A stretch of DNA of 64,000 nt from Mytilus edulis (lineage: Eukaryota): positions 14,074,001 through 14,138,000 of the forward strand of contig NC_092355.1 in NCBI RefSeq assembly GCF_963676685.1, written 5' to 3'. Position numbers and translations under genes: made by a program. The notes under the pieces are model-generated. The model saw only the letters and a program-made list of their open reading frames with translations, had not been told where the DNA came from and made no database searches. Shown here in pieces: positions 19,001-64,000 of this stretch. Each line of letters starts with the position of its first letter. Position 1 is the stretch's first letter.

Positions 19001-20888
19001 CTTTTTATTTTGATAAATAATTTGATTTTTAAATGTATTTGCTTTTGAATGGAAGATGTATATTTATTATAAATATATTCATTTGACGTGATAATAATAT
19101 GCCTACAACGATGTCAAGTGAATTGTCGTAGACATTTTCATGAAAAATGAAGTTGTCGTACTATTTTCTAATGCCTGTAGATCTGGAAATGACATTTTGT
19201 ATAATGGCGACTTACAGATAATTGAATTGTCTAGTTTTGTCGTGAATATTACAGTTGATTTCAATTCCTTCGATCGATATAGTCAAGCGGTTGATTTTGT
19301 CACGTTTTTTTGACTTCCTTTGTTTTTGAATTTAGAAGATTTCGGTATAATTTTTTTAATTGTTTTCTGTCACTTTTACAGAGGTTTCCCAGGAATTGTC
19401 TTTTTGATATAACGACTTTTCCTATTGAACAAACACATACATTGTTCAGTTTTGTCCATACTTAAAATGTGCTGCCACCTAATAATCATGTACACACAAT
19501 GTGGATAGTAAATTTCCCTGATAGAAATATACATTTGATCATTACTGCAGGCAGGGTCATTCTCCACGCGTCCACACAATATTTTGTGAAATTAACCGGT
19601 AGTTATTCAGTTGTTTTATCAATATCTGCGTGATAAAACTATTGCTAAGTTCAATCACTTACCAGGTTAGAAAGTCAGTTCTTTTTTTGCTGTTATTTTA
19701 AATTTCTTGACTCCAAATCTCGTAAAGAATTATCCAGAAGCTAGTGAACATTAGGTTGTTCTCATTTACAATTAGGGAGAAATAAGAACGTCAACTGTTC
19801 TTAAAAGATTTTTTTTTCATGTTATTTAAAGTGCAAAAAGTTTGTTACTGTATTAAACAATTATAAGAAAAGAAACCAACGACCCATTCACCCCCTCTAG
19901 ATCATGAGTGGGTGTCTCGGGAGCTTTTGTGTCAAATTACTGCTTTCTTAAAATCGTAGTAAAGTACTCACCTATTCATGGTTCATGATTTATTTCAGAC
20001 CAACCACAAGGTCAATTACCTGGGAATAGGGAGGAACGGAGCAACACAGACTTTACAACCGGTTAGTAATTGTCTTACGAATAAACCAATACTTTGTGTA
20101 TCCTATGTTTGAAGTTCGAGTAAGTTTTACATAAAACTTATTTTTGCCAGAATTAGATGATTAGGTTATAGTATCGCCTTTTTTTTCTAATGATCTCTAA
20201 ATATTAGTTTCCTTATGAATGCAAGCAAACATTTTTGAGTTTTTGATATAAAATTAGAATAAAGTCAATTCAAAAACAATTTTCGTCTTCAAACCACGAC
20301 TAAAGCAACCTTGAACACACAACAAAGTTGACCTTGTAACACTTGAAGTTTACCTTGTATCACTTTACGAATAACATTAAAATAAAAAGTTGACTTTCAA
20401 ACGTTTAGGGGCTCAAAACGACACTAACAATATAACCCAAATAATCAGTACTTCATTGAAATGTATAGGAGGCAAGTTTAGATGTCATATTGTACTTTTT
20501 AGGTGTAATCCTTGGAGGAGCCATAGGTTATGGTCTTGGTGGTTATGGACCAGGTTGGGGCTGGGGATGGGGATGGGGATGGGGACCAACTCCCTACGGT
20601 GGGTTTTGGGGAAGTTGGAGTGACTTTGGTGACGGTGGAAGCGTGGACATCGATCATATTGACTATGATTGTGGTAATGACAATGATTACGGATATGATA
20701 CACACGATATTGGTGACTTCGAGGCTGGAAATGATGGCGCTGGAGGAGACTTTGGTGATAGTGGCGGTGGTGGTGGCGGCTGTGGCGGTGGAGATGGTGG
20801 TGGCGATGGTGGAGGTGGTGGGGGAGGGTGTGGTGGCGGGGGTTGTGGCGGTGGTGGGTGTGGTGGTGGGGGTTGTGGTGGCGATTGA
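7030..20888 (+). CDS. PH-domain protein, evectin/PLEKHB-like, paralog 1 (316 aa, Gly-rich tail)
   Basis: Eight GT-AG exons join in frame (951 nt): 7030-7066, 8453-8500, 10571-10686, 11471-11652, 12414-12441, 18558-18648, 19999-20061, 20503-20888. Protein: MDCCGPNSIRIKKPTGRVVRTGYLKIYEEGCFFIGWKSRYFVLYDDSSLLWYQD...KGGIKLKMVANFMAVGPMC...PQLPKGRQVIHLMGV...DEDMMAWLEAIKPTLPPPPARP...DFTTGVILGGAIGYGLGGYGPGWGWGWGWGWG...GGGGCGGD. PH motifs are present (GYL, WKxRYFVL, LLWY, W-x-x-AI helix). The GxxC..P.G insert and D..G.LxG segment resemble evectins. Exon structure is conserved in paralog 2. Confidence 0.9.
7205..7440 (-). mobile_element. 5'-truncated LINE 3' end in the first coding intron
   Basis: Minus strand reads NIYKFEQLFASNNVIVLEKLCKFIKNVQEKVVPPG*, followed by a short UTR and AATAAA. 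Resembles the extreme C-terminus of invertebrate LINE ORF2. Confidence 0.5.
8685..9220. mobile_element. AT-rich MITE with imperfect ~50-bp terminal inverted repeats
   Basis: Left end tgtttaagtaaatagatgaaattgggaatttcacgtaatt matches the reverse complement of the right end tgttacagtaaataggtgaaattaggaattatacgtaatt. Flanked by TA runs, with internal gtaattac subrepeats. Confidence 0.7.
9846..10185 (+). repeat. Interspersed repeat family B (gtatcaccagcccagtagtc...gtagacgaaacgcgcgtctggcgta...ggtacctttgataact)
   Basis: Inverted copies at about 31428-31575, 47900-48215 and 62745-62990. Confidence 0.85.
10780..10960 (-). repeat. Interspersed repeat family C (agatgtggtatgattgccaatgagacaact...accgtacggccttcaaca)
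   Basis: Related copies at about 11910-12005, 48945-49320, 53130-53250 and 53750-53880. Confidence 0.8.
13501..17164. mobile_element. Non-autonomous CACTA/EnSpm-like element (outer copy) in intron 5 of paralog 1
   Basis: Starts CACTCAAAAAA at 13501 and ends ...TTTGTGTG running into a (TG)n tract. It carries ~22-bp subterminal repeats (agtaattcttttattaaaagta) at about 13780-13980 and is interrupted by a second copy. Confidence 0.7.
14335..15777 (-). mobile_element. Second copy of the same CACTA-like element inserted in inverted orientation into the first
   Basis: Ends are CACACAAAAA and TTTTTGAGTG. 14335-15070 is the reverse complement of 15778-17164 (missing about 0.7 kb), and 15071-15777 is the reverse complement of 13501-14334. 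Flanks CAT/CAG match the uninterrupted junction ctacctcccCAGcaactct preserved in the inner copy. Confidence 0.8.
17480..17995 (+). repeat. Interspersed repeat family D (...gtttaggggccagctgaaggacgcctccgggtgcgggaa...ccattctcaatttt)
   Basis: Partial copies at about 24240-24385 (+), 50680-52125 (split by the hAT element), 56420-56700 (+) and 61975-62145 (-). Confidence 0.85.
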
Positions 20889-29500: not shown

Positions 29501-30992
29501 TTTAAAAAGATGGGGGAAATGAATATTCCTTTAAGTACTATTCAAGTTGACGAAAAACTGACAAAAAATCAAAATGACAATACAATCTGGATAGTTTCAC
29601 AAGATGAAACATCAAATACTTATGAACTAAGAACCGCGGGTTTTCTTAGATGCAACGGTGGGGTGAGCAGTTCCTTAACATAAAAGTTTTTTGGCTTGCT
29701 CCTACACTTTTTGCAGCTCTATTTTTTGTATCTAAGTATTATCTCACATTGTTATATGATCTGTCATTATAAAGTACAAACAATACATTTATACTTAAAA
29801 AAAAGTACTTTCAATATACTGACACCTAAAATAAAGTACTTACAATTCAGTGATACTAAGTCCAGATTTGTCATCTAAATGAATTAAAGAATACTTGAAC
29901 TATTGAATTTAAAGTACAAAATCTATCCATGTATGTGGATCAATATATAATATAAACATTATGTGAATTAAAACATTTCATATTCAGTAAAATATGTGTA
30001 AAATTGCAATATATGTTTGTAGGAAGTTTCCATGGGGGAGATAATAACTTTTCTTTCAAAAAGTCTTTATTCAAAAGAATAATATTTTAGGTTATCTCCT
30101 CTGAAAATTTATCAATATTCACACATATTTTACTGAATATATGATGTTTTATTTAAAATGATATCTGATTCTTATAAATATAGAATACTTTTAGAAAGAA
30201 AAACTATATGAAAGCTTAGTTTGGACAATTTTATAGCTATTCAAAATAAACAGTTCCTCTTCAGCATGAAAATGACTATAATATAACAGCTGATTTTGAC
30301 ATTTTTGCAGTATTTGAAATTAAGGTAATTTACGCACAATACTTTTCATTTAATGAAGTTCATACAAGTGAGAGGTTTAGCGCTATAAAACCATGTCCAA
30401 TCCACCATTTTCTGCATTAGAAAATGTCTGTACCATGTCAGGAATATGACAGTTGTTGTCCATTCGTTTGATGTGTTTCATCCTTTGATTTTGCCATGTG
30501 ATTAGGGACTTTCCAGTTGAATTTTCAGGAGTTCAGTATTTTTGTGGTTTTACTTTTCGCTACTCAGTTTCAAAATAACAAGTTTTACATAACATTATCA
30601 TATATTGATAGGATATTACAAAAAGAAATAAAAGAGCGAACAAAATATATTGGTCAGTGTGTTTTCGAGATATTATTCATTGAAATTTTAGTGGGAAAAT
30701 GTTTCCTCTTGATTTTTCATAACTTTATCATTGACTAAAAAACATCAAGTGCCGAAGACGGTACGGTAAGCAATGGATTTCTTTTCAATCTGAACATGCA
30801 AATTGAAGACTGTTTAAAACATTTATTTCTCTTTCGTTTGTTCTATTTTCAGATTTCTTAAACGGTGTGAGAAAAACATTTCTCCTATATAGTGAAATAT
30901 CTTTTTCTCGGCAAATGGTTAATCGAAATTTCATAATGACGTGAAATTTCCTGGATTGCTCTTATGACGTGGACCAATCTTAAAACATTTAA

Positions 30993-37157: not shown

Positions 37158-40100
37158 ATGGAGTGTTGTGATCTAGATCCTATACGAATTAAAGGTAATT
37201 TCATATTTTATTTAACTATTAGATGTCTAAAACAAAAAGTTGGACTACTATCAGATAAAATAGAAAATAAAAATGGTTAATGTCTCAAAGTGACAACAAC
37301 CAGACTAAAGAGTAAAGTACACAGTCGAAGACCATCAATGGGTATTGAACACAGTAAGAGTATACCGCACCCGGAAGCGGACTTTTGAGTATACAAATAC
37401 TTTTAATAAATATATATATTTAAAAATATATATTCGAAAACAATCTACTCATCATTTTATGGTGCATTCACGTTTTATGATTTATGTGACATTCATACTC
37501 TCTATTGCACATTAAATAAGTACTTTGCCTCAGTTATGTGGGTGGTTTTCGGTTGGTTTTTTTTTGTCCTTTTTTAATATATTCAAGATATTCTAATACT
37601 TATGATGAACGTCTATTTATGTTAGGATTTTAAACCTTAAATAAAAAACACGAAATGTTATATAGTGCTTTTGATTTATCGTTGAGGATCAGTGACCAAA
37701 AAATCTGTCGGAAATATTATCCTGTTATATCGATGTGTCGCTACATTTTAGTTGCTTTATACATTTGTATGCACATCTGTGTCATTCGATTGTACGTTTA
37801 ACTTCTGAACAGGCAGGTGTACATGTGGGTAGCATAAAACAACATTAAGGAGGCTCGAGGGTATAAAAATGTCATACACAAGTATAAGATAAAGTTCATT
37901 TATAGAAAAATATAGCGAAATCCTATATTAAGAAAAAGAAATTGATTTAGACCCGCGAGCCCCCTTACAGGATCAAAAGGTATTAAATCTACATCATAGT
38001 GTTGAGTTAAGATGGCTTATAAAAAGGCCTGCTCTACATTTTACATATCTTTAATAATTATAAGACAAAGTAAAATAATTGGTGCAATTTTGCTGATACA
38101 AATTACTTTATAGGAACGAATATATTATATTTTGCTGAAGAAAAAACACTAAAAAGAGAACACTGACTTGAAAGCTGATTTTTCTAATTGATATTGTAGT
38201 TTTAACATTATGTAAACAATCGGCTTCAATTTTTATCAATGTAAAAACATGTGCAGGATGTGCAAAAATTAAAACAATAAGCAATAAATACCATATGAAA
38301 GTCTTTTTAAAAGAGTCAATCAAAAGCAGGACGGGAAATTAAAATAGCCACTGAAAATGAGTGTATATTGGCTAAGAACAGAAAATTAGATAATAAGGTT
38401 AAAATACAGTATGTTGAACTGTCACCATGAATAAAAAAGGGAGGACAAGTCAAGTCAAGTCGCGAACGGAAAACAATTACAACAAACTACTTTTCAAAAT
38501 ACAAATAGAAAATTGAAGAACAAATGTTTACGCCGTCTTTAACACACAAGTCAAAGAAACGCGAAAGATAAAACAAGAGATTTTTCATCTCACAAAGCGA
38601 AGGCGAACTGACAACGCCATGTCTAAAACGAAACACGACGACGAAATGACAAACCAAAAGTTTTCAGAACACGACATAGACAACACAACACTGACCAAAA
38701 TAACCCATCCAAAACCGCGGGTTGGTTCATGTCGCCCAGAAGGGTACCTACCTGCTTCACTATTGTGCATGTTCTTTGATGTATAATGTTATTCAAGAAA
38801 AAGAGATGATAGGTGGTAAATGGTACAAATTAAATAAGATACTCAAATTGCTAACCTATATTATATATTTTTTTTCATTATAGAGCCAACAAGTCGAGTA
38901 GTGAAGACTGGTTACCTTACTATTTATGAACGTACGTTTAATAAGAAGTTAATGTAGCCCGAACTGACAACATTTACAAACTGTTGAACAATGGTATTAA
39001 GGACTATACTTATTTCGTGGGAGATTTAGGCAGAGTTAATTAAATTAACACTTGTCAATTGACACTCAAAATAAGTCATGCTGAGAAAATAATTGATTGC
39101 ACATTTAACCTCCTTGTCTTGCTTAATTTTGAGTAGACGTATAATTGTAAACTATGAATTAAAACAAAACATGATAATGACAAAATAGTAAGATGAAATC
39201 AAGTAGCAATTAAAAAAAGCATTTAACCAGAAGGGACAACATTACTTTATGTTCATAATAAATTCATCATAGATATAAGTTTTAAATGAGAGCCAGATTT
39301 GTGTTATGTCAAATAAGGACTCGTCGGTGACACTCAAATCAATTAATCTAACCAGTACAAAGAAACAAATCATTTCACACAAAACTTAACCAAAAAATAG
39401 GGATGAGCTCTTCGAAAACAGTGTTGCTCCACATTTACATCCATCAACAAACGTTTTAGTTTACATCAATAACTTTTATCAAAATATATCATTTCAAAGT
39501 ATCTACGATGGTTCATAGTTTTGTTTTAAAGGGGTTCTTTATGTTTGGTTTAAAGTTCCGTTGTTGTTTTGGGAGTATCTTGTTTATGATTGTCTGTTAA
39601 GTATCTACCGATAAACTTCGTGTTTACCCTGTGTCCTGAAATTTGTTTTTCATTTTAATTTCACATATCGTTATAAGATTATTAATATTTTTCACTCTCT
39701 GTCGACCTTCCAGGAGCATCTTAGATCACCCGCCTTTTTTTTTCATCCCATGTCCTTAAATCTGTATACGGCTTTTTAAACAATGATTGTTTTTGTTTTT
39801 ATTATATCACGAATGTTTTATTACTGTTTTGTTATAAGAACGTGAATAGGTATTTATGCATCCTACCATTTTATCAACGTCAATTTCAGACATCGCTATT
39901 CACAATACCTTATTTTGAGAGGGTAACATAAAAAGCATAATCAAAAATGCAAACATATACATAATATATTTCTAACTATTGAAATGAAAATAAATTGTAA
40001 AGCTTTTTTCCTTTGTTTTTATGCATCTTAAATGTAGTTCCCTAACTGACGAAATATATCAAAATTTTTAATGCAAATGTGGTATCACAATATAACAAAA

Positions 40101-43100
40101 ACATAGCGCAGACATGTTGAAGAAAGCGTTTTCAATTCGTTACTGTGGACGCACGTCTATTCTATATATTTTGGTATTGTACAGGAGGATTTTTTGTCAA
40201 CGGATGGAAAGACCGTTATTTTAAATTGTATGCCGACAGCAGTCTTTTATGGTATCATGGAAACGACGATGAGTACCACAAGGGTGGTATAAGGCTAAAG
40301 GTAATCTTGTTTCACTAGTGTATGGGTATCATTTTCCAATTATGTAACACCACATACAGTTGTGTATATGTATTCAAACTTATCACACATTTGTATAACT
40401 TATTTATACTTTTTATAAAATTATATTCTTAAAGGACACTTGTACATTATCAATAGAAGGGATACATTTTGTATAGTCATAAGAAGATGTGGTAAGAAAG
40501 CCAATGCGAAGTTATAATATGTAAAATTTTACCATTCTTATAATCGCGTATGAATTGCATAGACAACCGACAACCACTGATCAATAGGTTTCAAAAATTT
40601 ATATATGTACGTGTTAATTTAAAAACTAGGAGTATACCTTTTTTCATAAAAGGTTAACCAGGAATAAACTGAAAATCCAAGAGGATACATTGAACTGTAT
40701 ATGATAAACGGAAAGAAATCCCAGTCTCTCCTTATTTATTTGTTTTCATATACATACAAAACATTCAGACAAAGCACTGTTCAGTAGCCACATTATATAT
40801 GTTCCAGATCATATGAAATTAAATTAGATTGCCTGAGGGATTTTGAATTTGACTTTTTTGAACATTTCAAAATTCATAAATGAAGTCTTTTAGAAAGGAA
40901 TATAATTTAAATTCAAATGACTACCTAAAAGCAGGCTTGAATGATTAAACCATCGAAGATAAACAGTCCAACAAAGCAATATCGACCTAATACTATCAAT
41001 TTAGAAATTATTGCTTGATTTTATCACTTAAAAAATATAAAGCAACAAGTTGAATATAATAAAAAAAAATAAGAACTCGCATCTGATATCCGAGTAATAT
41101 ATTTGTAATGTATTTTTTGTTAAAATCGCGCATTTATGTAAACAAAAAATGAAAAATAGCTATATTTATGGATTATTGGAAAAAAAAAACTAAATTAGCT
41201 TTGATAATTTTTACAGATGGTTGCAAATTTCATTGCAGTTGGACCAATGTGCCTTCATACGGTATGTTTCCCAAAGCTACCAAAAGGCAGACATGTTATA
41301 CATTTGATGGGTGTTCCTGATATCTTCAAAAAGAACACTAAAAGAAGAAACATTAAAATGAACTGGATTTTGTTCCCAATGGATGACGGAAATATGCAGT
41401 ACGTAATTACAGCACTTATGATACAGTTAGGGTCAGTTTTGAACTCTCTTAACATCTGTGTTCGTGGACATCCTCGAACTGTTTGTCACTATGACTCCAA
41501 GTGCATAACTAAACATTATTACTAGAGGAACTTAATTATATAGAATTAACACCGGAATGCAATGTTGTACGTGATTTACGGGGAAATCAACGGTATCAAT
41601 TTATCTGCCGAATATGCGCATTTTGACATGTCTCTCCAGTAATGTTCTAGATTAACTCATTTGAAAGCTATTCACCAAAAACACTGAGCTGTGTATGGGG
41701 GCGATATATTCCTTAATTTAAAATAAGTTCATAATTTATATTGTGTAATTTATATTTTTATTTTATTTGTATTGTAAAAGCAAACACTTAATCTTTCTGT
41801 TTATGCCAGTAATAGCTTTTGCTTTAAAGAGGCATTCGCTGTCAAACCCATTTCACCGCTTTCAATCAAAATAAAACAAAAGGCAGACATGTCATACATT
41901 TGATGGGTGTTCCTGATATCTTCAAAAAGGGGACTAAAAGAAGAAACCTTAAAATGAACTGGATTTTGTTCCCAACGGATGAGGGAGATATGCAGTACGT
42001 AATTACAACACATATGATAGAGTTGGGTTCAGTTTTAAACTCTCTTAAAATATGTGTTCGTGGACATCTTTAAACTGTGTGTTATGACTCCAAGTACATA
42101 ACTAAACATGATTTCTAGAGGAACTTAATTATATAGAGTTAACACCAAAATGCAATATTGTACGTGATTTACGGGAAAATCAACGGTATCAATTTTTCTA
42201 CCGAATATGCTCATTTTGACATGTCTCTTCGGTAATGTTCGAGGTTAACTCATTTGAAAGCTAAAGAAAAAAACCACCAAGATATTATTGCCATATCCGG
42301 GCGAGAAATCAGAGCTGTTCATGAAGGCGATATATTCTGTAATTTAAAATAAGAACATATATTGTGTAATTATATTTTCATTTTATTTATATTGTATAAG
42401 CAAACACTTAATCTCTCTGTGTATGCAAGTGATAGCTTTTGCTTTAAAGATGCATTCGCTGTCAAACCCATTTCACCGCTTTCAATCAAATTAAAATATC
42501 AAAATGTATTTCCAAATTACAAATTATTTTCATTCATTAATAATTGCAGGGCATGGCTTCAGGCTATTAAACCAACGGTAGGTACAATAAAATTCTCATT
42601 TGATATGTGTAGCGAAAAGCTGTACCTCTCGCACTTTAATTCACTTATTTTAAAAATGAACATCAAATTGACTTTCTTATTTCATACATTTTTACAACTC
42701 TTATATAAAATAAACTTATAACTGGTCTACTGCTTATCTTATTTTACCTGAATGCTTGTATCACAGGTCGTGTAAAATAATACAGCGAAGATGAACTGCA
42801 AACTTTGCAACTTATATGTCAATCAAACAATAACAAATTTGTGATTTTAAATGTCATTAACTCCAGAAGTAAAGGACGGTAGAGGTTGGTGAAATAATGT
42901 ATATTAAGACAAATCTTTACATAATCAGATGACAAATAGAGCTGTCTAGATATAGGCATATATATTAAAGTTGCTGCTGACGTTTTTCATGTTTTGAAAA
43001 CATTTTTCAATTTCACATTTAACTACATTTACGTCATATTAGGGGAAATACATCAATAATGAGTTTATTTAAATGATATATATATAGTTGAAAAAGTTGC

Positions 43101-46100
43101 CTTTTCGCCTTTGACCTTGACCTTGTATTTTTGTAGCTGCCTTCTCCTCCTGCAAGACCAGAGCACCCTCACCTCACTGAATCAAGTAATGGTGACCAGA
43201 TTAGCTTATACCCAATACGGTGTAAGTATGAATAGTTAAATACGTTACATTAACTACAAATAGAAGTATTTAAAAAATTGAAAGACCGTTCTCGTAATGC
43301 ATGCATAAAAAAATGCATGAATAGCAAATTTACATGACACATCCACAAGACAATGGTAAATACATAATGAATATGTTGGAGTTAGTAGAAGACTGCATGT
43401 ATTCGTTCTCTAATGGCAAGCAAAGTTTCTGACATACAGACGTTAGCTTTTTATGACTACAAACGATTTATGTTATTTAATACATAGTAGATTATCAAGG
43501 GCCTTATACATTGCAAACCCTCAAACATCCCGATTCGACGATTCCAATTCAGATCAAGAGACGATGTAATCACACACGTTAAATTGCCAAATCAATAACA
43601 AATATCATCACAAAAATGATCCAAAGACAATGAAATAGGTTTCAAACAAAATCTTAGTCATTCCTGATGTAGTGTACAAGGTCCATGAGAATCTACTCTT
43701 CATTAATTATCCTAAATCGTTTGCTAACAGTTACTGACATGCCAGGTCTATACCTCAATTAAGCTGATTGAAAGAATCCGTCTTCAAGTATTTATGATTG
43801 ACTATCAGATCGATGTGATTTGTGGCGAAATAAAAATATATGTGAAACCATTTTACTTGTTTGGCTTGTTCTATAATGCTTCTTCTATAAGACCCATCGG
43901 TGACTTTTGTCCGTTGTCTGTTCTTTGATCGGGTTGGAATCTCTTTGACAAATTCTCCTTTATCCTTTTCTGATTTAAATCAGATTTGTTTAACATAAGT
44001 GTATTATATAACAATTTACAGATCAAGTGTGTGCGTTTTGTTCTGTGTTACTCATTTTTTGTGAAGTTGGACTTTTATTTTTTATGAGAAACACTTCTCT
44101 TTCCGATTGTATAACTTTTTCCATACAACAAATATGTATTTCTTTTCACTTCGGTCATCTTGTAACAATTAAGCACTGTGTGCACATTATTGAATAAAGG
44201 CAACAGTAGTATATAAGTGTTCACAAGTCATAAATCGACTACAAAACATCCGGGTTTTCAACTTTTTTTCAGTTTTGAATTAATCTATATAAATTTCAGA
44301 CCAACCTGAATGTCAACATATAAACACTAGAGACGAAACAACCTATTCAGGCATTCAAAGAGGTAAGGTAATATATAAAAATAAAATATAGTAATATGAG
44401 ATGGCCTTTCAATAGATTATAATAGGTGAATGTGTTGTTCATGTTATTCATGACTTAAAACTTTCAATAATTTTGATATCTAAACGAGCTTCGACTTCGT
44501 AATTTATTTTGCTTTTTAAACTTTTTTTCGATTAAATATTGTTGTGATCCTGGTATTATTTATCAGTTTGTTTTAATGTTAAGTCCTAAAACATGATATA
44601 TCACTGCTGGTATTGCTTCATTTATCATATTCTTTACTTCCATTACGATTTATTGCTCTAGAAAGTTTTCGTACCTTACACATGCCGTGTGTAGTATACC
44701 ACCTTCTTTATTTTCATTACGGTGTATTGCTCCAGAAATGTTTCGTACCTTACACATGCCGAGTTCAATATAACACCTTCTTTATTTCCATTACGATGTG
44801 GTTGTATACGGTTCAGGGTAATCTTCTTTCTTTTTTGTGGTTTGTTTTGTATTTGCGACTTTTTGTATTTCTTTTGTTCTTATAACGTGACTCTGTACTT
44901 TAAAAGATCCCGTCAATATGATATTTTCTATTATATGTCATTATGATATATTTCTATTATGAATTACAATATACGTTGAACCACAAACGTCAAAATCATT
45001 CAATCGCGTAGTGGAATTAACTATTTTTGGATTCTTATAAATTCTATATATAACTTTTGGACTAATTTAAATCTCGGTCTATTTCTTAAATTTATTCTTA
45101 CATACTTTTGTTTTTTAACCCTGTATGCTAACATTCCCATGAAAATTTTTAAATTGTTTGTACGCACATTAAACGACAAATTTATGTGACGTATAAAATT
45201 TTCTGACGTCAGACACTCAAATCAATAAATGTGTTCGTAGATAGTAGATGTTTTTGTGTTCTGTTAAATTGTTCCTTTTAAAATTGTTAAACGATGATGA
45301 CTGATGTACCCATATTTTGACTATTTTATTTATTGTGTCTGTTTATTTAACGCATCAATGTAAAAATATCGGAAATTGATGGGACTGTCATTAAAATGAG
45401 AGGGCTAGCGCTACAGAACCAGGTTTAATCCACCATTTTCTACATTTGAAAATGCCTTTACCAAGTCAGGAATATGACAGTTCTTGTCCATTCGTTTTTG
45501 ATGCGTTTTGTTATTTGAATTTGCCATGTGATTATGGACTTTCCCAATTGATCTTCCTCTAAGTTCAGTATTTTTGTGATTTTACTTTTCACTAGTGTAT
45601 GGATATCATTTTCCAATTGTGGAACACCACATACAGTTTTGTATATGTATTCAAACTTATCTCACAATTGTAAAACTTATTTAAACTCATCAATTAAGAT
45701 TATGAAAGGACACGTCTATATAGTATTAACAAAAGGGATAAATTTTAAATAGTCATAAGAAGATGTGATAAGAAAGCCAATGCGACAACTCTTAATCGAA
45801 GTCATAATATGTAAAATTTTACCATTATTATTATCACTTATGAACCACATCGACAAACGACAACCCCTGATCAACAGGTTTCTAAAATCTATATATGTAC
45901 ATGTAAATTTAAAATCTAGGAGTTAATCTTTTTACAAATTATTATCTGAAATATAACAAATATATTTTTTTCAATTAAGGCGAATATACTGTTACCATCG
46001 AAGAGTGACAGCCCATCATCAGCGGTATCGACCTCATACTGGAGTTTATAATCTATTGCTAGATTTTTATCTATTCAAAAAATTAGAATGCAACTCGTAA

Positions 46101-47726
46101 ATATCGTTATAACACGAAACCGCATTTGACATCCGATCAATATATCTGTGTGAAGTTTTCCTGTAATTGCAATGATGAATCATTAATTTTTGAATTAATT
46201 TTTTTAAATCGATATTTTTCCTGATATCTAAAAAAATCTTATATTATCTTTGTTTTTTTTAACATGATATATCACTTCTGGTTTTGCTTCATTTAACATA
46301 TTCTTTACTTCCATTACGATGTATTGCTCCAGAAAGGTTTCGTACCTTACACATGCCGTGTGTAGTATAACACCTTCTTTATTTCCATTACGGTGTATTG
46401 CTTCAGAAATGTTTCGTACCTTACACTTACCGTGTGTTTTATAACACCTTCTTTATTTCCATTACGATGTATTGCTCCAGAAATGTTTCGTATCGTACAC
46501 CTGCCGTGTGTAGTATAACACCTTTTTTACTTACATAACGATGTATTGATCCAGAAATGTTTCGTACCTTACAATGTTGTTTGCAATATAACACTTTTTT
46601 TATTTCCATTACGTTGTATTGCTCCAGAAATTTTTCGTACCTTACACATGCCGAGTTCAATACAACACCTTCTTTATTTCCATTACAATGTATTACCCCA
46701 AAAATGTTACGTACCTTACCAATGTTGTGTCCAATATAACACCTTTTTTATTTCCATTACGTTGTATTGCTCAAGAAATGTTTCGTACCTTACACATGCC
46801 GGGTGCACTATAACACCTTCTTTATTTCCATCAGGATGTATTGCTTTAGAAATGTTTCGTACCTTACCCATGCTGTGTGCAATATAAAGGTAATGTGAGG
46901 CGTGATTTAAAGAGTTTCTGGGCAATAAAAGTATATGGTTTCTAACGATTTCTTGTGCAGAAAGGCACCAAGAAGTAGATTTAGTTAAAGTGTTGCTGAA
47001 AACTATTAATACCTATACCAGATGGTAAAACAGAATGATTCGAAAGAAAATTCTATTATCATTCTTCACAGTACAAAAACAAATCGTTTTTCTAATGAAT
47101 TTGTCCATCAAAAGAACTGAAGTATATCCAATTTATCAAATATAAAGTACATATATATGTACACAGTCTTTACAAACGATGTTGTTTTAATATGCTTTTT
47201 AGGTGTTATACTGGGAGGAGGAGCTTTACCTTATGGTATTGGTGCTTATGGGCCTGGTATGGGATGGAGATGGGGATGGGGATGGGGACCAAATCCCTAT
47301 GGTGGATTTTGGGGAAGTTGGAACGACTTTGGTGACTGCGGAAGTGTGAACATCGATCGCATTGTCGACGATTTGTGTAAACAAAACAACAATTACGGCT
47401 ATGATATAAAAGATATTAGGGAGTTTGAAAGAGTAAACTTTAGTAACACCACTAACGGTGGCGGTGATGGTTGTGGTGGTGATGAATGCTCATGCAATGA
47501 TTGCTTGGATAATTGCTGTAAATGTGATATCTCTGGCGACGATTGCTGTGGAGATAATTGCTGTAAAGATGATTGCTGTTGTGATTGTTGCTTTAAAGAT
47601 GATTTCTGTGGAAAGGATTGCTGTGGAAAGGATTGCTGTGGAGAGGATTGCTGTGGTGATGGAGGCGGAGTTGGTGGTGCAGGTACTGTAGAATACACCG
47701 GCGGAGATTGTGGTTGTGGGTGTTAA
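37158..47726 (+). CDS. PH-domain protein, evectin/PLEKHB-like, paralog 2 (360 aa, Cys/Asp-rich metallothionein-like tail)
   Basis: Eight GT-AG exons join in frame (1083 nt): 37158-37194, 38884-38931, 40185-40300, 41217-41398, 42550-42577, 43137-43221, 44300-44362, 47203-47726. Phases match paralog 1, and exons 1-5 and 7 have identical lengths. Exon 4 is identical at 46 of 60 aa. Protein: MECCDLDPIRIKEPTSRVVKTGYLTIYERGFFVNGWKDRYFKLY...QAWLQAIKPTLPSPPARP...GVILGGGALPYG...CCGKDCCGEDCC...DCGCGC. Confidence 0.9.
37849..37964. mobile_element. Short internally deleted Kolobok-like element
   Basis: TTAA|ggaggctcgagggt ... acccgcgagccccc|TTAC, an imperfect 14-bp TIR. Confidence 0.55.
41878..41998 (+). 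pseudogene. Truncated, frameshifted duplicate of exon 4 within a ~600-bp tandem duplication
   Basis: About 41282-41875 is repeated at about 41878-42495. The copy lacks the acceptor and 5' part of exon 4 and has a 1-nt deletion after PDIFK. Confidence 0.85.
43460..43723. mobile_element. MITE with ~55-bp imperfect TIRs in intron 6 of paralog 2
   Basis: caaacgatttatg...agtagattatcaagggccttataca pairs with tgtacaaggtccatgagaatctact...taaatcgtttg. Confidence 0.6.
46300..46885. repeat. 74-bp minisatellite, about 8 copies (about 2 more at 44625-44780)
   Basis: Unit ataacaccttctttatttccattacgatgtattgctccagaaatgtttcgtaccttacacatgccgtgtgtagt; period 46441 to 46515. Confidence 0.9.
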
Positions 47727-50700
47727 GATTTTGAATTAAAGTCGTGTTTTATCAACTGTGAGATAAAAGTTGTAATATAGAATATTGGACAAAATGTAAT
47801 AGAATATGTCCTTTGTATGTATGATTACAAAATTGATTTGAACATTAGAAATGTTACTGTATCATGTGTATGATAATCTATTTTTCTTATCTTGTCTGTA
47901 GGTATCAAGGGTACCAGATTTGTAATTTTATACGCCAGTCGCGCGTTTCGTCTAAATAAGATACATCAGTGACCCTCAGATTGAAAAAGTTATAAAGCCA
48001 AACATGTACAAAGTTCAAGAGCATTGAAAACAAAAATTTCAAATAGTTGTCCAAACGACTGAGGTAATCTTACTTGGATAAGAAAATCCTTAGTATTTCG
48101 AAACATTCATACGTTTGTAAACAAGAAAATTATAAAATGACCACATAATTAATATATCCATGTCAACACCGAAGTGCTGACAACTGGACTGGTGATACCT
48201 TCGGGGACGAAACATCTATTTTATGTTTCTCTTATCAGCTTTCAAATTGAAGACAACTATGCAACAAACTCTTTAGTCGTCAGTATCAAAGTGAATTACT
48301 CATTCAATTTTAGCAGATGAGAGATCTAAAACTTAAGTATTTGTATAAATCAAAAATACACGTTGTTTTAATCAAGTGTATATGTAATCTATCATACACA
48401 CCTTCTTTATTTATCTGTGATGGAATGATTATATGTATTGTCTTCTTTTTGTGCATGTTAAGTATGTACTTAGGTGAAATTTGAAAACAAATCCAGAAAT
48501 TAAAACTACAAGCGGAAAGAGCATTAGTTTAGGAACAACATAAGCTAAAAATATTGATAGGTCATCATGGTCATGGAGATCCTTTTTGAGATATTTCAGA
48601 TTTAAGAAATGACGGGAAAACTTTAAAGGCTGACACGGACTTTTACCTTACATTTGCATTGGCACTATTTTTTATATGGCTATCAATTGAGACGTGTGCT
48701 TTCATTATTTGCCAGCTTATTACATTCTCAAAAGAAACTTGGTCGAACATCTCCGTGGCATTTTTTTCGAGTTGATTTTAGCTTACCACACTACCAAACC
48801 ATTACCTAAAATTTAATATAAAAAAAATCTACGGTGTGAAGGTTTTTTTTTAAAATGTATTATTTATTATTAATTATTGACTCCCAAATCATGACTTCAA
48901 TGTTTTAAAACTCAATTAACATGTATAAAAGATGTGAGGAATAAAAGATGTGGTATGAGTGCCAATGAAACAACTGACCATCCGAGTCATAATTTGTAAA
49001 AGTAAACCATTATAAGTCATATATAAAAAAAAAAAGAAGCTGTGGAAGGATTGCCAATGACACAAATCTCAACAATTGACCAAATGGCACAGAAATTAAC
49101 AACTATAGGTCACCGTACGGCCTTCAACAATAAGAAAAGCTCATACCGAATAGTCAGCTATAAAATGTCTCGAAATGACAAATGAAGAACAATTTAAATG
49201 AGATACTAACGATCTAATTTATTTACAAAAACTAAACGAAAAATAAATAAGTAACATATCAACAAACGACAACCATGGAATTACAGGTTTTTGACTTACA
49301 TGACTTGGCGGGGTTAAATATGTGTAGTGGCAATAGGACATATATATAGAAATACAGCCGTTCAAGATTACCATTTAATAACATAATTTATTACTTCCGC
49401 CCACGCCGACGTCATTGACGTTCCGACGTAGACAAACAAAAGTACATTAACATAGGAACGTATTTCGTGCTATATTCACGACAACATGTTAGCGGAATTC
49501 CAACCTTAAACAGTGGTGTAACAGTACAACATAAGAACGAACTATCAAAATCAGTTAAAAAGTGTTCACTCATCAGATAGATACAAATAGAAATACATCT
49601 AACATAAAACACAGAGAGAGGCCTGTTACAGTTATTGCATTTGAATTCTAATTTTGAATGGGTACATCAATATTTCTATTGTATGTTATATAGTTAGCAT
49701 TTTTTGTAAAAACATTGGGAAGGGAGCTGTTAAGCGTCAGATGAATCGATTTCATATCAAAGCACATTTCTGCACACACACAAATAGAAAAAATATTTCA
49801 CATACCATTTTCAGTCGTATACAATGCTAAACGGAATATCAAGTTAAATTGTCCATTTTTGTAAAAATTGATGACCTCTTGATAAAACCCCACATTTCTA
49901 CAGACACACAAATATAACAAAATCATTTCATATACCTTTGTGTTGGACTGTTGACTAAAATCATCGAAGCAAACACATTGGATTGTAGGTATTGCTATTT
50001 TGAAGTATGATTTTTCAAATCCTATTTATAGTGTTTTCTTGCTAAACTTTAAATAATATATCTGCCGTTTATTCTTGTTTGGAAAATATTGATACTTAAA
50101 TATAGTTTTTTTTTAGTTTATAGTCAATTTTGCAATAGCCTGTTATTTTTTCGGTTTGTAAGCTGTTATCATTTTGCTTTCAAATTAATTATCAACAATA
50201 TTATAAAAGAAAAGGAAAAAGGAATTGTCCCATTTGCAATAGTATGAAAAATAACTTGCCAGGTGACATGTATTCTTACACATGTTTACATTGTTTTCTT
50301 TTCAAGAAATTAACCACTTGTTGATCACATGGGCAACCTTTTCCAATAAAAGTTAAATAAAAGTTGCAGGATTACATATTAAGATGAGTTAAACTATTGA
50401 CTTGCAAGTCAATAATACATCAATCATATTTTTTCAAGTTCATGTGACGAAATTCAACTAAAGTGTCATAATAATAGCACTAATTTATTACCATATTCCT
50501 CTAATCTGAATATTGAAACACAAACAAAACATAACGTGTTACTTCGTAGCTGTGTTCCTATATAATTATCATTTTTGTAAGATAAAAGAACAAATGAACA
50601 CAAATAATAAAATTGTTATTTAAAACGAGAATTTTTACATCTTGACGATTTCACTCCACTAGTGCACAATTGTATGTAAAGGCTAGCACCTCATGGTACG

Positions 50701-54659: not shown

Positions 54660-54812
54660 AACACGACTTTAATTAAAAATCTTAACAACCACAACACAAT
54701 CTCCGCCGATGTATTTTCCACTACCTATTCACCAACGCCGCCTCAATCACCACAGCAATCCTTTCCACAGCAACCATCTTTAAAGCAACAATCACAACAG
54801 CTATCAGAGAAA
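54660..54812 (-). pseudogene. Decayed extra copy of the Cys-rich tail and start of the 3' UTR of paralog 2
   Basis: Minus strand reads tgttgtgattgttgctttaaagatggttgctgtggaaaggattgctgtggtgattga...gttaagatttttaattaaagtcgtgtt and matches 47575-47748, with stops and indels. Confidence 0.8.
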
Positions 54813-54940
54813 TAGATTATCCTACAATAACATTTCTAATGTTCAAATTATTTTTGTAATCATACAAACATACAAACGACATATTCATTTTTTTTATCAT
54901 TCTATATTAAAATGTTTATCTCACATTTGATAAAACATAA

Positions 54941-57359
54941 CTATACTACAAAATAGCAACACCCACAACCACAATCTCCGCCAGTGTATTCTTCGGTTCC
55001 TGCACCACCAACTCCGCCTCCAGCACCACAACAATCATCTCCACAACAACCTTCATCAGCATCACCACCACAACCATCACCGACACCGTTATTAAAGTTT
55101 CCGCTTTCAAAATCCATAATATCTGTTATATCATAGCCGTATTTGTTGCTTTTTTTACACAAATCGTCGACAATGCGATCGATGTTCACACTGCCACTGT
55201 CACCAAAGTCGTTTAATTTCTGTTCATGGACAAATTCATTACAAACGATCTTTCATGAACTGTGAAGAATGATAAAACAAAACCTTGTTTTGCAATAGAA
55301 TTTTCGTTCGAATCTTTCTGTTTTATCATCCGGTATAGGTATTCAAAGTTTTCAGCAACACTTTAATCAAATCTACTTGTAGGTGCCTTTCTGCACAGAA
55401 AATCGTTAGACATGTACCATATACTTCTAGTACTCAGAAACTCTTTAAATCACGCCTCAAAATACCTTAATATTGAACACGACATGTGTAAGGTACGAAA
55501 CATTTCTAGAGCAATACATCGTCATGGAAGTAACGAATATGTTAAATGAAGCAAAACCAGCAGTGATATATCATGTTCTACGATTTAACATTAAAATAAA
55601 CTCATCATTAAACCTAGCTATATAGTATTACAATAATATGTTATCGAAAAAAAAAATTAAATTAAAATACAGTACGAAGTCGACGTCGAAGCTCCTTTAG
55701 GTATCAAAATTATTAAAAGATTGAAGTCATGAATAAAATGAACAACACTTTTGTTACTCTTTCTATTATTATTAGCTATTGAAAAGACATCTCCCATTAT
55801 TTTATTTGTTACAGATTACCTTACCCCTTCGAATGCCTAAATAGGTTCTTTCGTCTTTTTGCTTTATATGTTGACATTCAGGTTGGTCTGAAATTTATTT
55901 AGATTCATTTAAAATTGAAAACTGGATGTTTTTTTGTTTTTCAGTCGATTTTTGACTTTGAACAACTATATACTACTGTTGCCTTTATTAAGTACTGTAC
56001 ACACAGTGCTGAATTGTAACAAGATGGCCGAAATGAAAAAAACTATCTAAAAGACAAATGTTTCTCATAAAAAAATAAAACTCGAACTTCACAAAAAATT
56101 AGTAATTTAGACAGATCAAAACGCACCCACTTGATCTGTGAATTGTAATAATAAACTTATGTTAAACTTATGTTAAACTAATCCGAATTAGAACAGAGAA
56201 AGGTAAAAGGGAATTTGTCAAAGAGATTACAACCCGAGCAAAGAACAGAAAACGGACAAATATCACCGATGAGTCTTATAAAAGAAGCATTATAGAACAC
56301 GCAAAACAAGTAAAGGGTTTAACATATATTTTTATTCCAAAGGCGGTAGTTTCACCACAAGTCACCTCGATCTGATAGTCAATCATAAATACTTGAAGAC
56401 GGATTTTTTCAATCAGCCTAATTGGGGTAGAGACCTGGTATTTTAATAACTGTTGGTATAGTAGTCTTTTGTTGATTAATATTCTATTGTCATTTTGCTT
56501 CGATTCTTTAGTTATATTTTCTGACATTGGACTTCTTTTAAACTGCGTATTGGTGCGTGTTTCTTTATTCTACATGGTCTAGAGGTATAGGGGAGGTTAC
56601 GATATCACAAAACACGTTAAATCCGCCGCATTTCTGTGCCTGTACCAAGCCAGGAACCTCTGGCCTGTGTGAGTCTTGTTTAATTTTTGATTTTTTTTCA
56701 TTTATATGTTTTACGATTTTGTATAACAAGAGACGATGTAATCAGAAAAGTAAAGTTTCCAAATTATTAAGGAATAGCGTCACAAAAATGATCCAAAGAC
56801 AATGAAATAGGTTTCTAACAAAATCTGAGTCATTCCTGGTGTAACGTACAAGGTCCTTGATAATCTACTCTTTATAAATTATCATAAATCGTTTGTCGTC
56901 ATTAAAAGCTAATGTCTGTAAGTCAGGAACATGGCTTGCTATTAGAGAACGATTACATGCAGTTTTCTACTCATTAAGAATATATTAGCTCCAACATGTT
57001 CATTATGTATTTATAATTGTCTTGTTGATGTGTCATGTACATTTGCTGTACATGATTTTTTTTAATTACGAGAACGGTCTTTTATCTTTTAAAATAATTC
57101 AATTTTTAGTTAAATATTACGTATAAAGTTATTCAGACTTACACCGTACAACATTAACTGTTGGGTATAAGTTAACCTGGTCACCATTACTTGATTCAGG
57201 AGCAATCTCTTGTCTAACCTGGTTACCGTTGTTTAAATACTGAGTATTCTCTGGTGTAACCTGAGTACCATTGCTTTGATGGTGAGGGTCCTCTGGTCTA
57301 ACCTGATTTCCATTAACTGAATGGCGAGGATGCTCTGGTCTTGAAGGAGGACAAGGCAG
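54941..57359 (-). pseudogene. Inverted partial paralog 3 (exons 6-8 only; exon 8 acceptor deleted)
   Basis: Exon 6 at 57359-57143 (open, 217 nt). Exon 7 at 55887-55825 (YQPECQHIKQKDERTYLGIRRG). Exon 8 remnant at about 55213-54941 lacks about 200 bp, including the acceptor, the hydrophobic segment and the GW tract. Introns align to paralog 2, and homology stops at about 57417. Confidence 0.85.
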
Positions 57360-63732: not shown

Positions 63733-64000
63733 TCACTCAGATATATATACTGCTGAAAAATAGGAAAAATAATCACCATTTATTTGTTGTGAACCATAGC
63801 TTTTCACAGAAACATTATCTCCTTTTTTAAGTTCTAGCACGGGATTTGCAGTTTCCGATCCGCCATGGAGCCTTGGACCATACAAGTACAAGATATTACT
63901 TCCATTTTTAGCTATGTAACAAATTAGTTCACCTCCACCTTGTGACATGATTGTTGCTGATATTTGATAAAGTCCTTTCTTTTTTGCTGTAAATATTCCT
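63733..64000 (-). CDS. C1q domain-containing protein, 3' part of the last exon (gene continues beyond the window)
   Basis: GIFTAKKKGLYQISATIMS...IAKNG...SETANPVLELKKGDNVSVK...INGDYFSYFSAVYISE* contains the gC1q motifs GxFT..GxY, LxLxxGDxVxV and SxFS. Confidence 0.92.
   Translation of the reverse strand, partial: GIFTAKKKGLYQISATIMSQGGGELICYIAKNGSNILYLYGPRLHGGSETANPVLELKKGDNVSVKSYGSQQINGDYFSYFSAVYISE

What the first reader, a model, noticed from the sequence alone, without database searches (positions are those of the whole stretch)
47460..47726. Metallothionein-like Cys/Asp domain fused to a PH protein, apparently derived from a poly-Gly repeat
Seen: 22 Cys in 56 residues (CSCNDCLDNCCKC...CCGKDCCGKDCCGEDCC) and 26 in the whole tail, built on a 15-bp xxDCC period. 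The equivalent region of paralog 1 is a 15-bp GGGGC repeat with 5 Cys, and paralog 3 is intermediate (EGCCGDDCC...CGCGCC). GGT is one substitution from TGT and from GAT. Established: CC/CxC clusters at this density bind Zn, Cd or Cu in metallothioneins. Inference: a stepwise origin of a membrane-tethered metal-binding or redox domain. Heavy palmitoylation or disulfide cross-linking are alternatives.
Basis: partly seen in the sequence, partly recalled or inferred. Interest (0 to 1): 0.8.

Follow-up and report, generated by a model that had tools for sequence, protein, structure and literature searches.

The report
Cysteine-pair repeat tail of mussel protein
The last exon of an expressed but unstudied blue-mussel gene ends in a young tandem repeat that puts 26 cysteines, mostly as Asp-Cys-Cys units, on a protein with a membrane-lipid-binding type of domain; it looks suited to holding metal ions, but that has never been tested.

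Summary
Window 47203-47726 (+) is exon 8 of Mytilus edulis XP_071141542.1 (360 aa, "uncharacterized protein"). Its tail has 26 Cys in 90 residues and 22 in 56. It is built on a 15-bp unit, GAT TGC TGT GGA GAT (D-C-C-G-D).

Contigs of four public runs carry GT..AG joints linking this exon to the PH-domain exons. All four show the array without any indel.

The family was found only in Mytilus. This genome holds seven terminal exons. Four have Gly/Asp-rich tails ending in GGGC-type repeats; only one well-supported clade has Cys pairs.

"Paralog 3" is a truncated gene fragment here, so it is not a clean intermediate.

No metallothionein family or Cys pattern matches. The closest working analogue is the zinc-binding di-Cys tail of plant HMA4. 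Metal binding remains an untested inference; S-acylation and neutral repeat drift remain open.

The scan had not reported this feature before, and I found nothing in print on the family.

The parts
37158..37194 (+). Exon 1: start codon and the N-terminal M-E-C-C-D-L-D-P-I-R-I-K. The di-Cys is conserved across the family.
   Evidence: Exact substring of P0004. C3 is invariant in 10 of 10 aligned proteins. Exon end inferred from the GT donor and from the CDS sum of 1083 nt.
38884..38931 (+). Exon 2: start of the PH domain.
   Evidence: AG/GT borders were read from the sequence.
40185..40300 (+). Exon 3: PH domain (GWKDRYFKLY...).
41217..41398 (+). Exon 4: PH domain. This is the copy the transcripts use.
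   Evidence: The RNA contig letters at 41930-41932 (AAC) equal the letters of this copy at 41334-41336.
41877..41994 (+). Partial duplicate of the 3' part of exon 4. It has no AG acceptor and appears unused.
   Evidence: 14 differences over 170 aligned bases; the upstream context is ...ataaaa.
42550..42577 (+). Exon 5: micro-exon encoding AWLQAIKPT, the end of the PH C-terminal helix.
   Evidence: GT..AG joints. Substring match.
43137..43221 (+). Exon 6: Pro-rich linker (LPSPPARPEHP...).
   Evidence: Joints..
44300..44362 (+). Exon 7: linker.
   Evidence: The joints 43221>44300 and 44360(+2)>47201(+2) are each seen in 4 of 4 runs.
47203..47726 (+). Exon 8, coding part, including the TAA stop at 47724-47726.
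47205..47321 (+). Gly/Trp-rich segment (GVILGG...GWRWGWGWGPNPYGGFWGSW). This is the most conserved part of the exon.
   Evidence: Invariant W and G columns. Seven copies in this genome.
47322..47453 (+). Acidic segment (NDFGD...VNIDRIVDD...YGYD...FE).
47454..47723 (+). Cys/Asp/Gly tail: 90 residues, 26 Cys, 8 di-Cys runs. It ends in GDCGCGC.
47511..47660 (+). Ten 15-bp units in register, consensus GAT TGC TGT GGA GAT. Tandem Repeats Finder places the array at 47541-47661.
47727..47800 (+). 3' UTR. It is transcribed at least to the end of the stretch that was laid.
   Evidence: Contigs X1, X2, X5 and X6 all reach 47800 (table 8).
20502..20888 (+). Terminal exon of paralog 1 (the XP_071141392.1 type). 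Its tail is made of GGGGC-type units and has 5 Cys.
54956..55213 (-). Truncated terminal ORF of paralog 3. It lacks the Gly/Trp segment and its acceptor site. The tail is short, with 2 di-Cys.
54670..54806 (-). Second, degenerate copy of a long Cys array plus 3' UTR (CCDCCFKDGCCGKDCCGD, then a stop), lying downstream of paralog 3.
   Evidence: 84% identity to 47571-47627 at the protein level. Read directly.

Best explanation
What is shown:
- This is the coding end of a real, spliced, annotated gene of Mytilus edulis (XP_071141542.1).
- The protein has an N-terminal Met-Glu-Cys-Cys and a PH domain (residues 18-136).
- After the PH domain come a Pro-rich linker, a conserved Gly/Trp-rich segment and an acidic segment.
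- It ends in a low-complexity tail.

What is inferred, with fair confidence (about 0.8):
- In the family's ancestor the tail was Gly/Asp-rich and ended in GGGC-type repeats.
- In one clade a unit of the D-G-C-G type became D-C-C-G.
- That 15-bp unit (GAT TGC TGT GGA GAT) was then amplified by slippage or unequal exchange to 8-10 copies.
- This made a coding minisatellite with 8 Asp/Asn-Cys-Cys sites.

Function (inference only, about 0.35):
- The protein has no signal peptide-like start and no hydrophobic stretch of transmembrane strength, so the tail should sit in the reducing cytosol.
- It is probably held near membranes by the PH domain and by acylation of the N-terminal Cys pair.
- There, the thiolate pairs with neighbouring carboxylates would chelate several Zn(II), Cu(I) or Cd(II) ions.
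- This is how the di-Cys C-terminal extension of plant HMA4 works. It would act as a local metal buffer or sensor, not as a classical metallothionein.
For: Gene and expression:
- GT..AG joints are seen in contigs of 3-4 of 4 runs. The array has the same length in 4 of 4, with no differing letter at 47541-47661.
- All 8 exons are exact pieces of P0004.
- Pfam PH scores above its cut-off in 4 of 4 family proteins tested.

Evolution:
- Of 7 terminal exons in this genome, the 4 outside the Cys clade have no Cys-Cys. Only L001, L002 and L007 do.
- The Cys-pair clade has 100/99 support. The midpoint root puts Gly-rich tails on both sides of the root.
- L002 keeps a GCGGGGGCGGCGGCGG end behind its array.
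- The unit consensus is identical in the par2 and L002 arrays.
- The TGC-TGT codon order recurs in 7 of 8 par2 Cys-Cys runs.

Constraint:
- Cys codon columns deviate from the unit consensus less than spacer columns do. In par2 the figures are 5/60 against 22/90 (p=0.016). In L002 they are 4/48 against 25/72 (p=0.0009).
- The frame runs through the array to a C-terminal Cys that is invariant in 10 of 10 proteins.

Cytosolic location:
- The highest Kyte-Doolittle 19-residue mean is 1.47, and it lies inside the PH domain.

Analogue:
- AtHMA4c has 13 di-Cys motifs. It has about 11 Zn sites with KD<10 nM, which fall to about 4 when the di-Cys are changed to di-Ala. A neighbouring Glu raises the affinity of one di-Cys site 25-fold (PMC6255694, passages read).
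- In this tail all 8 di-Cys runs follow Asp or Asn, and the tail has 21 Asp+Glu against 5 Lys+Arg.
Against: - There are no metal data of any kind.
- No metallothionein or other Pfam family matches the tail at E<=10. No PDB sequence and no small protein resembles it.
- The AF2 model is useless (mean pLDDT 29).
- The Fisher tests are weakened in three ways: I chose the register from the Cys periodicity, the units share ancestry, and the numbers are small.
- The tree has no outgroup outside Mytilus, so polarity rests on midpoint rooting plus the retained GGGC end of L002.
- The tail has 3 aromatic residues, which is unusual for metallothioneins.
- MRE-like cores are not enriched in the window (14 found, 14.8 expected). 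Three lie within 1 kb upstream of exon 1, but two of them overlap and the transcription start is unknown.
- Tissue and exposure data for the runs are coded, so induction by metals could not be examined.
Confidence: 0.4

Rival explanations
1. S-acylation platform. The Cys pairs are palmitoylated, as in a cysteine-string. Together with the N-terminal Cys pair and the PH domain, this would pin the tail to a membrane.
For: - The N-terminal M-x-C-C is conserved (C3 invariant) and a C-terminal Cys motif is conserved in 10 of 10 proteins.
- The PH domain would bring the tail near membranes.
- The local stretch CCCDCCF resembles a cysteine string. That resemblance is recalled, not tested.
Against: - The tail is strongly acidic (21 Asp+Glu against 5 Lys+Arg), which should repel it from the anionic inner leaflet.
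- No hydrophobic or basic flank is present.
- Pfam finds no J-domain and no other cysteine-string context.
Confidence: 0.2
2. Tolerated coding minisatellite without a Cys-specific role. The disordered tail is free to vary, and slippage happened to amplify a Cys-bearing unit.
For: - Tails differ widely between tandem paralogs (Gly; Gly/Asp/Tyr; Cys/Asp) while the upstream parts stay conserved.
- Unit number differs between par2 and the P0008 tail of another M. edulis assembly.
- Paralog 3 is decayed and carries a broken array remnant.
- The family is restricted to one genus.
Against: - Cys columns are better kept than spacer columns in two diverged arrays.
- The frame is kept through the array to a conserved C-terminal Cys.
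- The array is identical in 4 of 4 runs under two organism labels.
Confidence: 0.25
3. Disulfide cross-linking or redox module, like the high-sulphur keratin-associated proteins with Cys-Cys pentapeptide repeats. It could be extracellular if the Gly/Trp segment spans the membrane.
For: - The period is five residues with a Cys-Cys pair.
- The segment GVILGG...GYG is Gly-zipper-like and mildly hydrophobic.
- Two N-x-S/T sequons lie just before the tail (NFS and NTT).
Against: - No signal peptide-like N-terminus and no window with mean hydropathy of 1.6 or more.
- No keratin-associated or other family matches at E<=10.
- The PH domain and the N-terminal Cys pair argue for a cytosolic protein.
Confidence: 0.1
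4. Not a real coding feature: an assembly artefact, the wrong strand or the wrong frame.
For: Two other frames across the array are also open: 77 aa on the plus strand and 99 aa on the minus strand.
Against: - Spliced contigs from four runs reproduce the array and join it, with plus-strand GT..AG borders, to upstream coding exons.
- The exon lengths sum to 361 codons.
- Paralogs keep the same frame.
Confidence: 0.01

Closest known systems
Cytosolic C-terminal extension of plant Zn/Cd P1B-ATPases HMA4 and HMA2 (PMC6255694; passages read)
   Same: - A disordered cytosolic C-terminal tail on a membrane-associated protein.
- It carries many di-Cys motifs (13 in AtHMA4, 6 in AtHMA2, 8 here) among Asp/Glu residues.
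- The plant tails have diverged substantially between close species.
- In the plants, the di-Cys motifs give nanomolar Zn binding.
   Different: - Here the carrier is a PH-domain protein, not a pump.
- There is no His stretch (0 His in the tail).
- The Cys pairs sit in a regular 15-bp tandem array.
- There is no sequence relationship, and metal binding is untested.
Bivalve metallothioneins MT10/MT20 (alpha + beta1 domains; PMC7826182, passages read)
   Same: - Cys content is 28.9%, within the 26.9-32% quoted for bivalve MTs.
- Low complexity and probably disordered.
- That paper argues that new MT domains can arise de novo from low-complexity sequence in molluscs.
   Different: - MTs are free-standing proteins of 66-78 residues built on [CxC] motifs. 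This is the tail of a 360-residue PH protein built on [CC] motifs.
- The alpha and beta1 patterns are absent.
- No Pfam match.
- Three aromatic residues are present.
Cysteine-string protein (DNAJC5); recalled, not checked in any call
   Same: A dense run of Cys near a membrane-targeted protein; the local stretch CCCDCCF.
   Different: No J-domain. The context is acidic rather than hydrophobic or basic. The Cys are spread over 56 residues in a periodic array.
High-sulphur keratin-associated proteins with Cys-Cys pentapeptide repeats; recalled, not checked in any call
   Same: Five-residue period with a Cys-Cys pair. Evolution by gain and loss of repeat units.
   Different: No family match at E<=10. 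The spacers are Asp/Gly/Lys, not Gln/Pro/Ser/Thr. The attached domains differ.
Its own paralogs in Mytilus (XP_071141392.1, XP_071141546.1, XP_071141540.1 and others)
   Same: Same eight-exon PH + linker + Gly/Trp + acidic architecture and the same terminal Cys motif.
   Different: Tails are Gly-rich (5 Cys) or Gly/Asp/Tyr-rich (2 Cys). Only L002/XP_071141540.1 also has a long Cys-pair array (20 Cys, 6 di-Cys).

Membership tests
PH domain (Pfam PF00169) | Score at or above Pfam's gathering cut-off | tested here: met
   P0004 scores 26.8 bits against 25.1, at residues 18-136. All 4 of 4 family proteins tested pass. The margin is narrow. The AF2 model could not confirm the fold.
Metallothionein (bivalve alpha/beta1 type) | Small free-standing protein (66-78 residues in bivalves; generally under 100) | tested here: not met
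   This is the tail of a 360-residue multi-part protein. The size range comes from PMC7826182.
Metallothionein (bivalve alpha/beta1 type) | Cys content of about 15-30% | tested here: met
   26 of 90 residues = 28.9% in the tail. For the whole protein it is only 33 of 360.
Metallothionein (bivalve alpha/beta1 type) | 12-Cys alpha and 9-Cys beta1 patterns of [CxC] motifs | tested here: not met
   Regular expressions taken from PMC7826182 found 0 matches in P0004, P0012, P0008 and P0017. The tail has 8 CC runs against 5 CxC.
Metallothionein (any Pfam MT family) | Profile match | tested here: not met
   0 families at E<=10 for the tail alone. Only PH families matched the whole protein at E<=0.1.
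Metallothionein (any) | Binds several d10 metal ions through thiolate clusters | not testable with these tools
   Needs ICP-MS or ESI-MS on the expressed tail.
HMA4-type di-Cys C-terminal extension | Multiple di-Cys motifs in a cytosolic C-terminal extension | tested here: met
   8 di-Cys runs. The cytosolic location is inferred only from the lack of a transmembrane-strength segment.
HMA4-type di-Cys C-terminal extension | Attached to a P1B-type ATPase | tested here: not met
   The only domain found is PH.
Cysteine-string protein | J-domain next to the Cys string | tested here: not met
   Pfam reports PH families only.
Cysteine-string protein | S-acylation of the Cys string | not testable with these tools
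   Needs an acyl-exchange assay.

The most novel reading that the evidence does not exclude
A membrane-proximal, multi-site Zn/Cu/Cd-binding module was born within the genus Mytilus from a Gly/Asp-rich disordered tail. It took one or two point changes followed by amplification of a 15-bp unit. The ancestral-like state (GGGGC), the short state (2-3 Cys pairs) and the expanded state (6-8 Cys pairs) survive side by side as tandem paralogs. That would make it a natural series for how a metal-binding domain arises and is fused to a signalling domain, in the standard sentinel animal for metal pollution.
Probability: 0.2. Interest if true: 0.7.

Novelty: new variant of a known kind. Interest (0 to 1): 0.5.

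Why it matters
Mussels are the reference animals for monitoring metal pollution, and their metal handling is usually ascribed to the small metallothioneins. If this tail binds metal, it is an unrecognised thiol-rich metal ligand outside the metallothionein families, attached to a phosphoinositide-binding type of domain. It could affect how metal is partitioned in tissues and how "metallothionein-like protein" assays are read.

Whatever the function, the locus is a clear case of a coding minisatellite turning a Gly-rich tail into a Cys-rich one. The sister states are preserved in the same gene cluster, so the birth of a Cys-rich module can be tested by comparing and expressing the natural paralog tails.

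Tried and rejected
- Structure. AlphaFold2 on a 10-sequence family alignment gave mean pLDDT 29.1 with no residue above 50. I therefore ran no fold search and draw no structural claim. The ESM Atlas holds the protein (pTM 0.42, pLDDT 0.48) but gave no usable look-alike for the tail; all structure rows had TM below 0.5.
- Tail homology. Pfam at E<=10 found 0 families. PDB sequences gave only two antibody chains at E=0.95. The 5.8-billion protein set, tail alone, gave 5 candidates and none scored; that search only sees proteins of 50-157 residues. HMMER over 1.84 billion representatives with the whole exon gave 3 hits: the protein itself, an unrelated 946-residue repeat protein, and a 61-residue family fragment.
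- Own genome. The tail matched only itself and paralog 3.
- Transmembrane idea. I considered the Gly/Trp segment as an anchor. The Kyte-Doolittle 19-residue maximum is 1.47 or less in all 8 proteins tested, so it was not adopted. This is a crude test.
- Metal-response elements. The core TGCRCNC occurs 14 times in the window against 14.8 expected. Three (two of them overlapping) lie at 36169-36697, upstream of exon 1. I treat this as inconclusive.
- Literature. Five searches returned 0 papers on the family or nothing specific to it. They covered accessions, names and "Mytilus + PH domain-containing protein + cysteine-rich". Supplementary files were not opened; expression tables there could list this gene.
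- Earlier notes. A word search for the family in the scan's notes found nothing on this feature.
So whether paralog 3's short tail is ancestral or a contraction stays open.
- Rows left out of the tree (11 rows used):
  - near-identical cluster mates: P0001, P0014, P0015, P0016, P0003, P0011, P0018, P0020, P0022
  - truncated or frameshifted models: P0007, P0013, P0021, P0027, P0028, P0029
  - the chimeric P0008
  - the first half of P0024
  - the unrelated or fragmentary P0009, P0010, P0023
- Also for the tree: tails were cut off all rows before building. P0005 stands in for the chromosome-3 copies only because its conserved part resembles L004/L005. That link was not tested.
Full report
**What is at the coordinates.** The window is AT-rich (31% G+C). 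It is G000:C12:14074001-14138000 of a 1.37-Gb genome. From 47203 an open frame runs to a TAA at 47724-47726. It reads, in order:
- GVILGG... then a Gly/Trp-rich stretch
- ...NDFGDCGSVNIDRIVDDLCK...YGYD...FERVNFSNTT
- NGGGDGCGGDECSCNDCLDNCCKCDISGDDCCGDNCCKDDCCCDCCFKDDFCGKDCCGKDCCGEDCCGDGGGVGGAGTVEYTGGDCGCGC

There are 22 Cys in 56 residues (47487-47654) and 26 Cys in the 90-residue tail (47454-47723). Tandem Repeats Finder gives period 15 at 47541-47661 (8.1 copies, 76% matches), and also periods 45 and 75. In register the array is ten units with consensus GAT TGC TGT GGA GAT. The tail has 8 Cys-Cys runs, each preceded by Asp (6) or Asn (2).

**It is a real, expressed exon of a PH-domain gene.**
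- *Identity.* A search with the conserved part of the exon returned Mytilus proteins carrying Pfam PH. A second search returned P0004, M. edulis XP_071141542.1, "uncharacterized protein", 360 residues. Its last 174 residues are 100% identical to the window.
- *Exon check.* Taken one exon at a time, eight window segments translate to exact pieces of P0004. With AG/GT borders they sum to 1083 nt, which is 361 codons. Full-length work used the database protein.
- *Domain.* Pfam PH scores 26.8 bits against a cut-off of 25.1, at residues 18-136. All 4 of 4 family proteins tested pass.
- *Runs.* 24 runs were listed, of which 20 hold the exon, from 12 studies. None is on record as RNA.
- *Joints.* Contigs of the four runs I laid carry GT..AG joints:
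  - 41994>42550, in 3 of 4 runs
  - 42576>43136, in 3 of 4 runs
  - 43221>44300, in 4 of 4 runs
  - 44360(+2)>47201(+2), in 4 of 4 runs
- *What the joints show.* Intron-skipping contigs mean these runs hold spliced RNA, and they match the RefSeq model.
- *Variation.* The array length is the same in 4 of 4 runs. These carry two organism labels, A and B. There are no differing letters at 47541-47661. The differences elsewhere in the exon are 47300 (synonymous), 47311 (W>S, one run), 47423 (synonymous, one run), 47434 (V>G, all four) and 47530 (I>S, one run).
- *Caveat on exon 4.* The piece aligned at 41877-41994 is a partial duplicate. The contig letters there (AAC at 41930-41932) are those of the true exon 4 at 41217-41398, which lay outside the stretch I laid.

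**The family.**
- All relatives found are from Mytilus: edulis, galloprovincialis, trossulus, californianus and coruscus.
- HMMER over 1.84 billion representatives found nothing else related.
- The window's genome has seven terminal exons of this kind.
  - Five lie within about 105 kb on C12: paralog 1; paralog 2, which is this finding; paralog 3 on the minus strand; L002; and L006.
  - Two lie on C3: L004 and L005.
- Features shared across the family:
  - an N-terminal M-[DE]-C-C (C3 invariant)
  - the PH domain
  - a TLPxPPxRP linker
  - a nearly invariant GYGPGxGWxWGWGWGPxPY segment
  - an acidic YGYD...FE segment
  - a terminal Cys motif (C356 invariant in 10 of 10)
- No protein has a 19-residue window with mean hydropathy above 1.47, and the N-terminus is not hydrophobic. 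I therefore read these as cytosolic, membrane-peripheral proteins. This is an inference.

**Direction of change.**
- Tails outside one clade are Gly-rich and have no Cys-Cys.
  - Paralog 1 has 5 Cys.
  - L006 has 2 Cys.
  - L004 and L005 are Gly/Asp-rich and end in GGGCGGGCGG-type repeats.
- A tree was built from the parts upstream of the tails (11 rows, 266 columns). It groups paralog 2, L002, the M. galloprovincialis short-tail gene and an M. coruscus copy with 100/99 support. Paralog 1 is sister to that group, and the midpoint root falls between (C3 + L006) and the rest.
- L002 still ends in GCGGGGGCGGCGGCGG behind its Cys array.
- The limits are that there is no outgroup outside Mytilus and that the root is a midpoint root.

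**How the array arose.**
- In paralog 2, 7 of the 8 Cys-Cys runs are the ordered codon pair TGC TGT.
- The L002 array has the same unit consensus, GATTGCTGTGGAGAT.
- Independent Gly-to-Cys changes along an old Gly repeat would not reproduce one codon order. One seed unit that was then amplified would.
- The seed is plausibly the ...GDGCGGD... element that all clade members keep. D-G-C-G to D-C-C-G is one GGY-to-TGY change.
- The M. coruscus copy has 7 Cys and 2 Cys-Cys runs. A short array therefore predates the M. edulis-complex expansion to 6-8 pairs.
- Unit number differs between paralog 2 and the tail of P0008 from another M. edulis assembly.

**Paralog 3 is not a clean intermediate.**
- In this genome it lacks PH exons: none map between 57400 and 64000.
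- It lacks the Gly/Trp segment and its acceptor site.
- It is followed by a second, broken remnant of a long array plus 3' UTR at 54806-54670.
- Intact genes with the same short tail do exist in M. galloprovincialis.
- Two runs carry contig letters of that type (table 5c).

**Signs of constraint.** Within both arrays the Cys codon columns deviate from the unit consensus less than the spacer columns do.

| Array | Cys columns | Spacer columns | p |
|---|---|---|---|
| Paralog 2 | 5/60 | 22/90 | 0.016 |
| L002 | 4/48 | 25/72 | 0.0009 |

I set the register from the Cys periodicity and the units share ancestry, so these are indications, not proofs. The reading frame is kept through every array to the conserved terminal Cys.

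**Function.** Nothing here measures function.
- The tail matches no Pfam family at E<=10.
- It matches no solved structure by sequence.
- It matches no small protein.
- The Atlas gave no usable look-alike.
- AF2 failed.
- It is not a metallothionein by membership. It is not free-standing, the bivalve alpha and beta1 [CxC] patterns quoted in PMC7826182 are absent, and Cys-Cys dominates over CxC.
- The best working analogue I found is the cytosolic C-terminal extension of plant HMA4 (PMC6255694, passages read).
  - Its 13 di-Cys motifs give about 11 Zn sites with KD<10 nM.
  - These fall to about 4 when the di-Cys are replaced.
  - A neighbouring Glu raises the affinity of a di-Cys site 25-fold.
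- The mussel tail offers 8 di-Cys, each next to Asp or Asn, in a strongly acidic context.
- I therefore rank the options as follows:
  - multi-site soft-metal binding, about 0.35
  - a tolerated repeat without a Cys-specific role, 0.25
  - S-acylation, 0.2 (the acidity argues against it)
  - disulfide cross-linking, 0.1
- MRE-like cores upstream of exon 1 are a weak, inconclusive hint.

**Novelty.**
- The gene is annotated but unnamed.
- Five literature searches found nothing on the family. Supplements were not seen.
- The kind of thing is known: Cys-rich low-complexity metal-binding or cross-linking tails that evolve by repeat amplification. De novo MT domains have been argued for molluscs (PMC7826182).
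- What is new is this combination: a di-Cys/Asp coding minisatellite on a Mytilus-only PH-domain family, with the sister states preserved in one cluster.
- I score it as a new variant of a known kind, interest 0.5.

Noticed in passing
window 41877-41994 (compare 41281-41398): A partial duplicate of the 3' part of PH exon 4 and the start of its intron lies about 600 bp downstream, inside the same intron. Its translation is 100% identical to residues 90-128 of the M. galloprovincialis protein P0001, whereas the used exon differs from them. It has no AG acceptor.
   Followed up: partly
window 54670-57359 (-) and 63778-63999 (-): Paralog 3 is only a 3' fragment: a linker exon, an exon-7-like piece and a truncated last exon. 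It lies downstream of a C1q-domain exon. In another M. edulis assembly a gene model (P0008, Pfam C1q) fuses C1q with this linker and a long Cys array. That is either a mis-joined model or a real chimera.
   Followed up: partly
window 45300-45600 (also about 3700-3940 and 30400-30560): A repeat inside intron 7 has very high summed contig depth in all four runs (about 5,800 to 42,000, against tens for the exons). Many loose ends surround it, as expected for an abundant transcribed mobile element or SINE.
   Followed up: no
window 46294-46887, 44630-44799 and 55467-55577 (-): A 74-bp tandem repeat (8 copies, 83% matches) lies in intron 7. Shorter arrays of the same unit lie upstream of it and next to paralog 3.
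   Followed up: no
window 47205-47321 and all family members: The Gly/Trp segment (GYGPGxGWxWGWGWGPxPYGGFWGSW) is the most conserved part of the last exon. Its Trp and Gly columns are invariant in 10 of 10 proteins, yet it matches no Pfam family at E<=10. The family's core C-terminal function probably lies here rather than in the variable tails.
   Followed up: partly
window 36169-36178 and 36691-36697: Three matches to the metal-response-element core TGCRCNC (two overlapping on opposite strands) lie within 1 kb upstream of exon 1 of the Cys-rich paralog. None lies within 1 kb upstream of exon 1 of paralog 1. The window as a whole shows no enrichment.
   Followed up: partly
tables 5 and 5c (joints 43215>44300 and 44322>47202): Runs X5 and X2 hold contigs whose extra letters encode the exon-7 peptide of the M. 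galloprovincialis short-tail gene. So those animals express an intact short-tail paralog that this assembly lacks.
   Followed up: no
window 47434: The reference has T (Val, FERVNF). All four runs have G (Gly, FERGNF), which is also the residue in the paralogs. The reference individual carries a minority or private allele.
   Followed up: no
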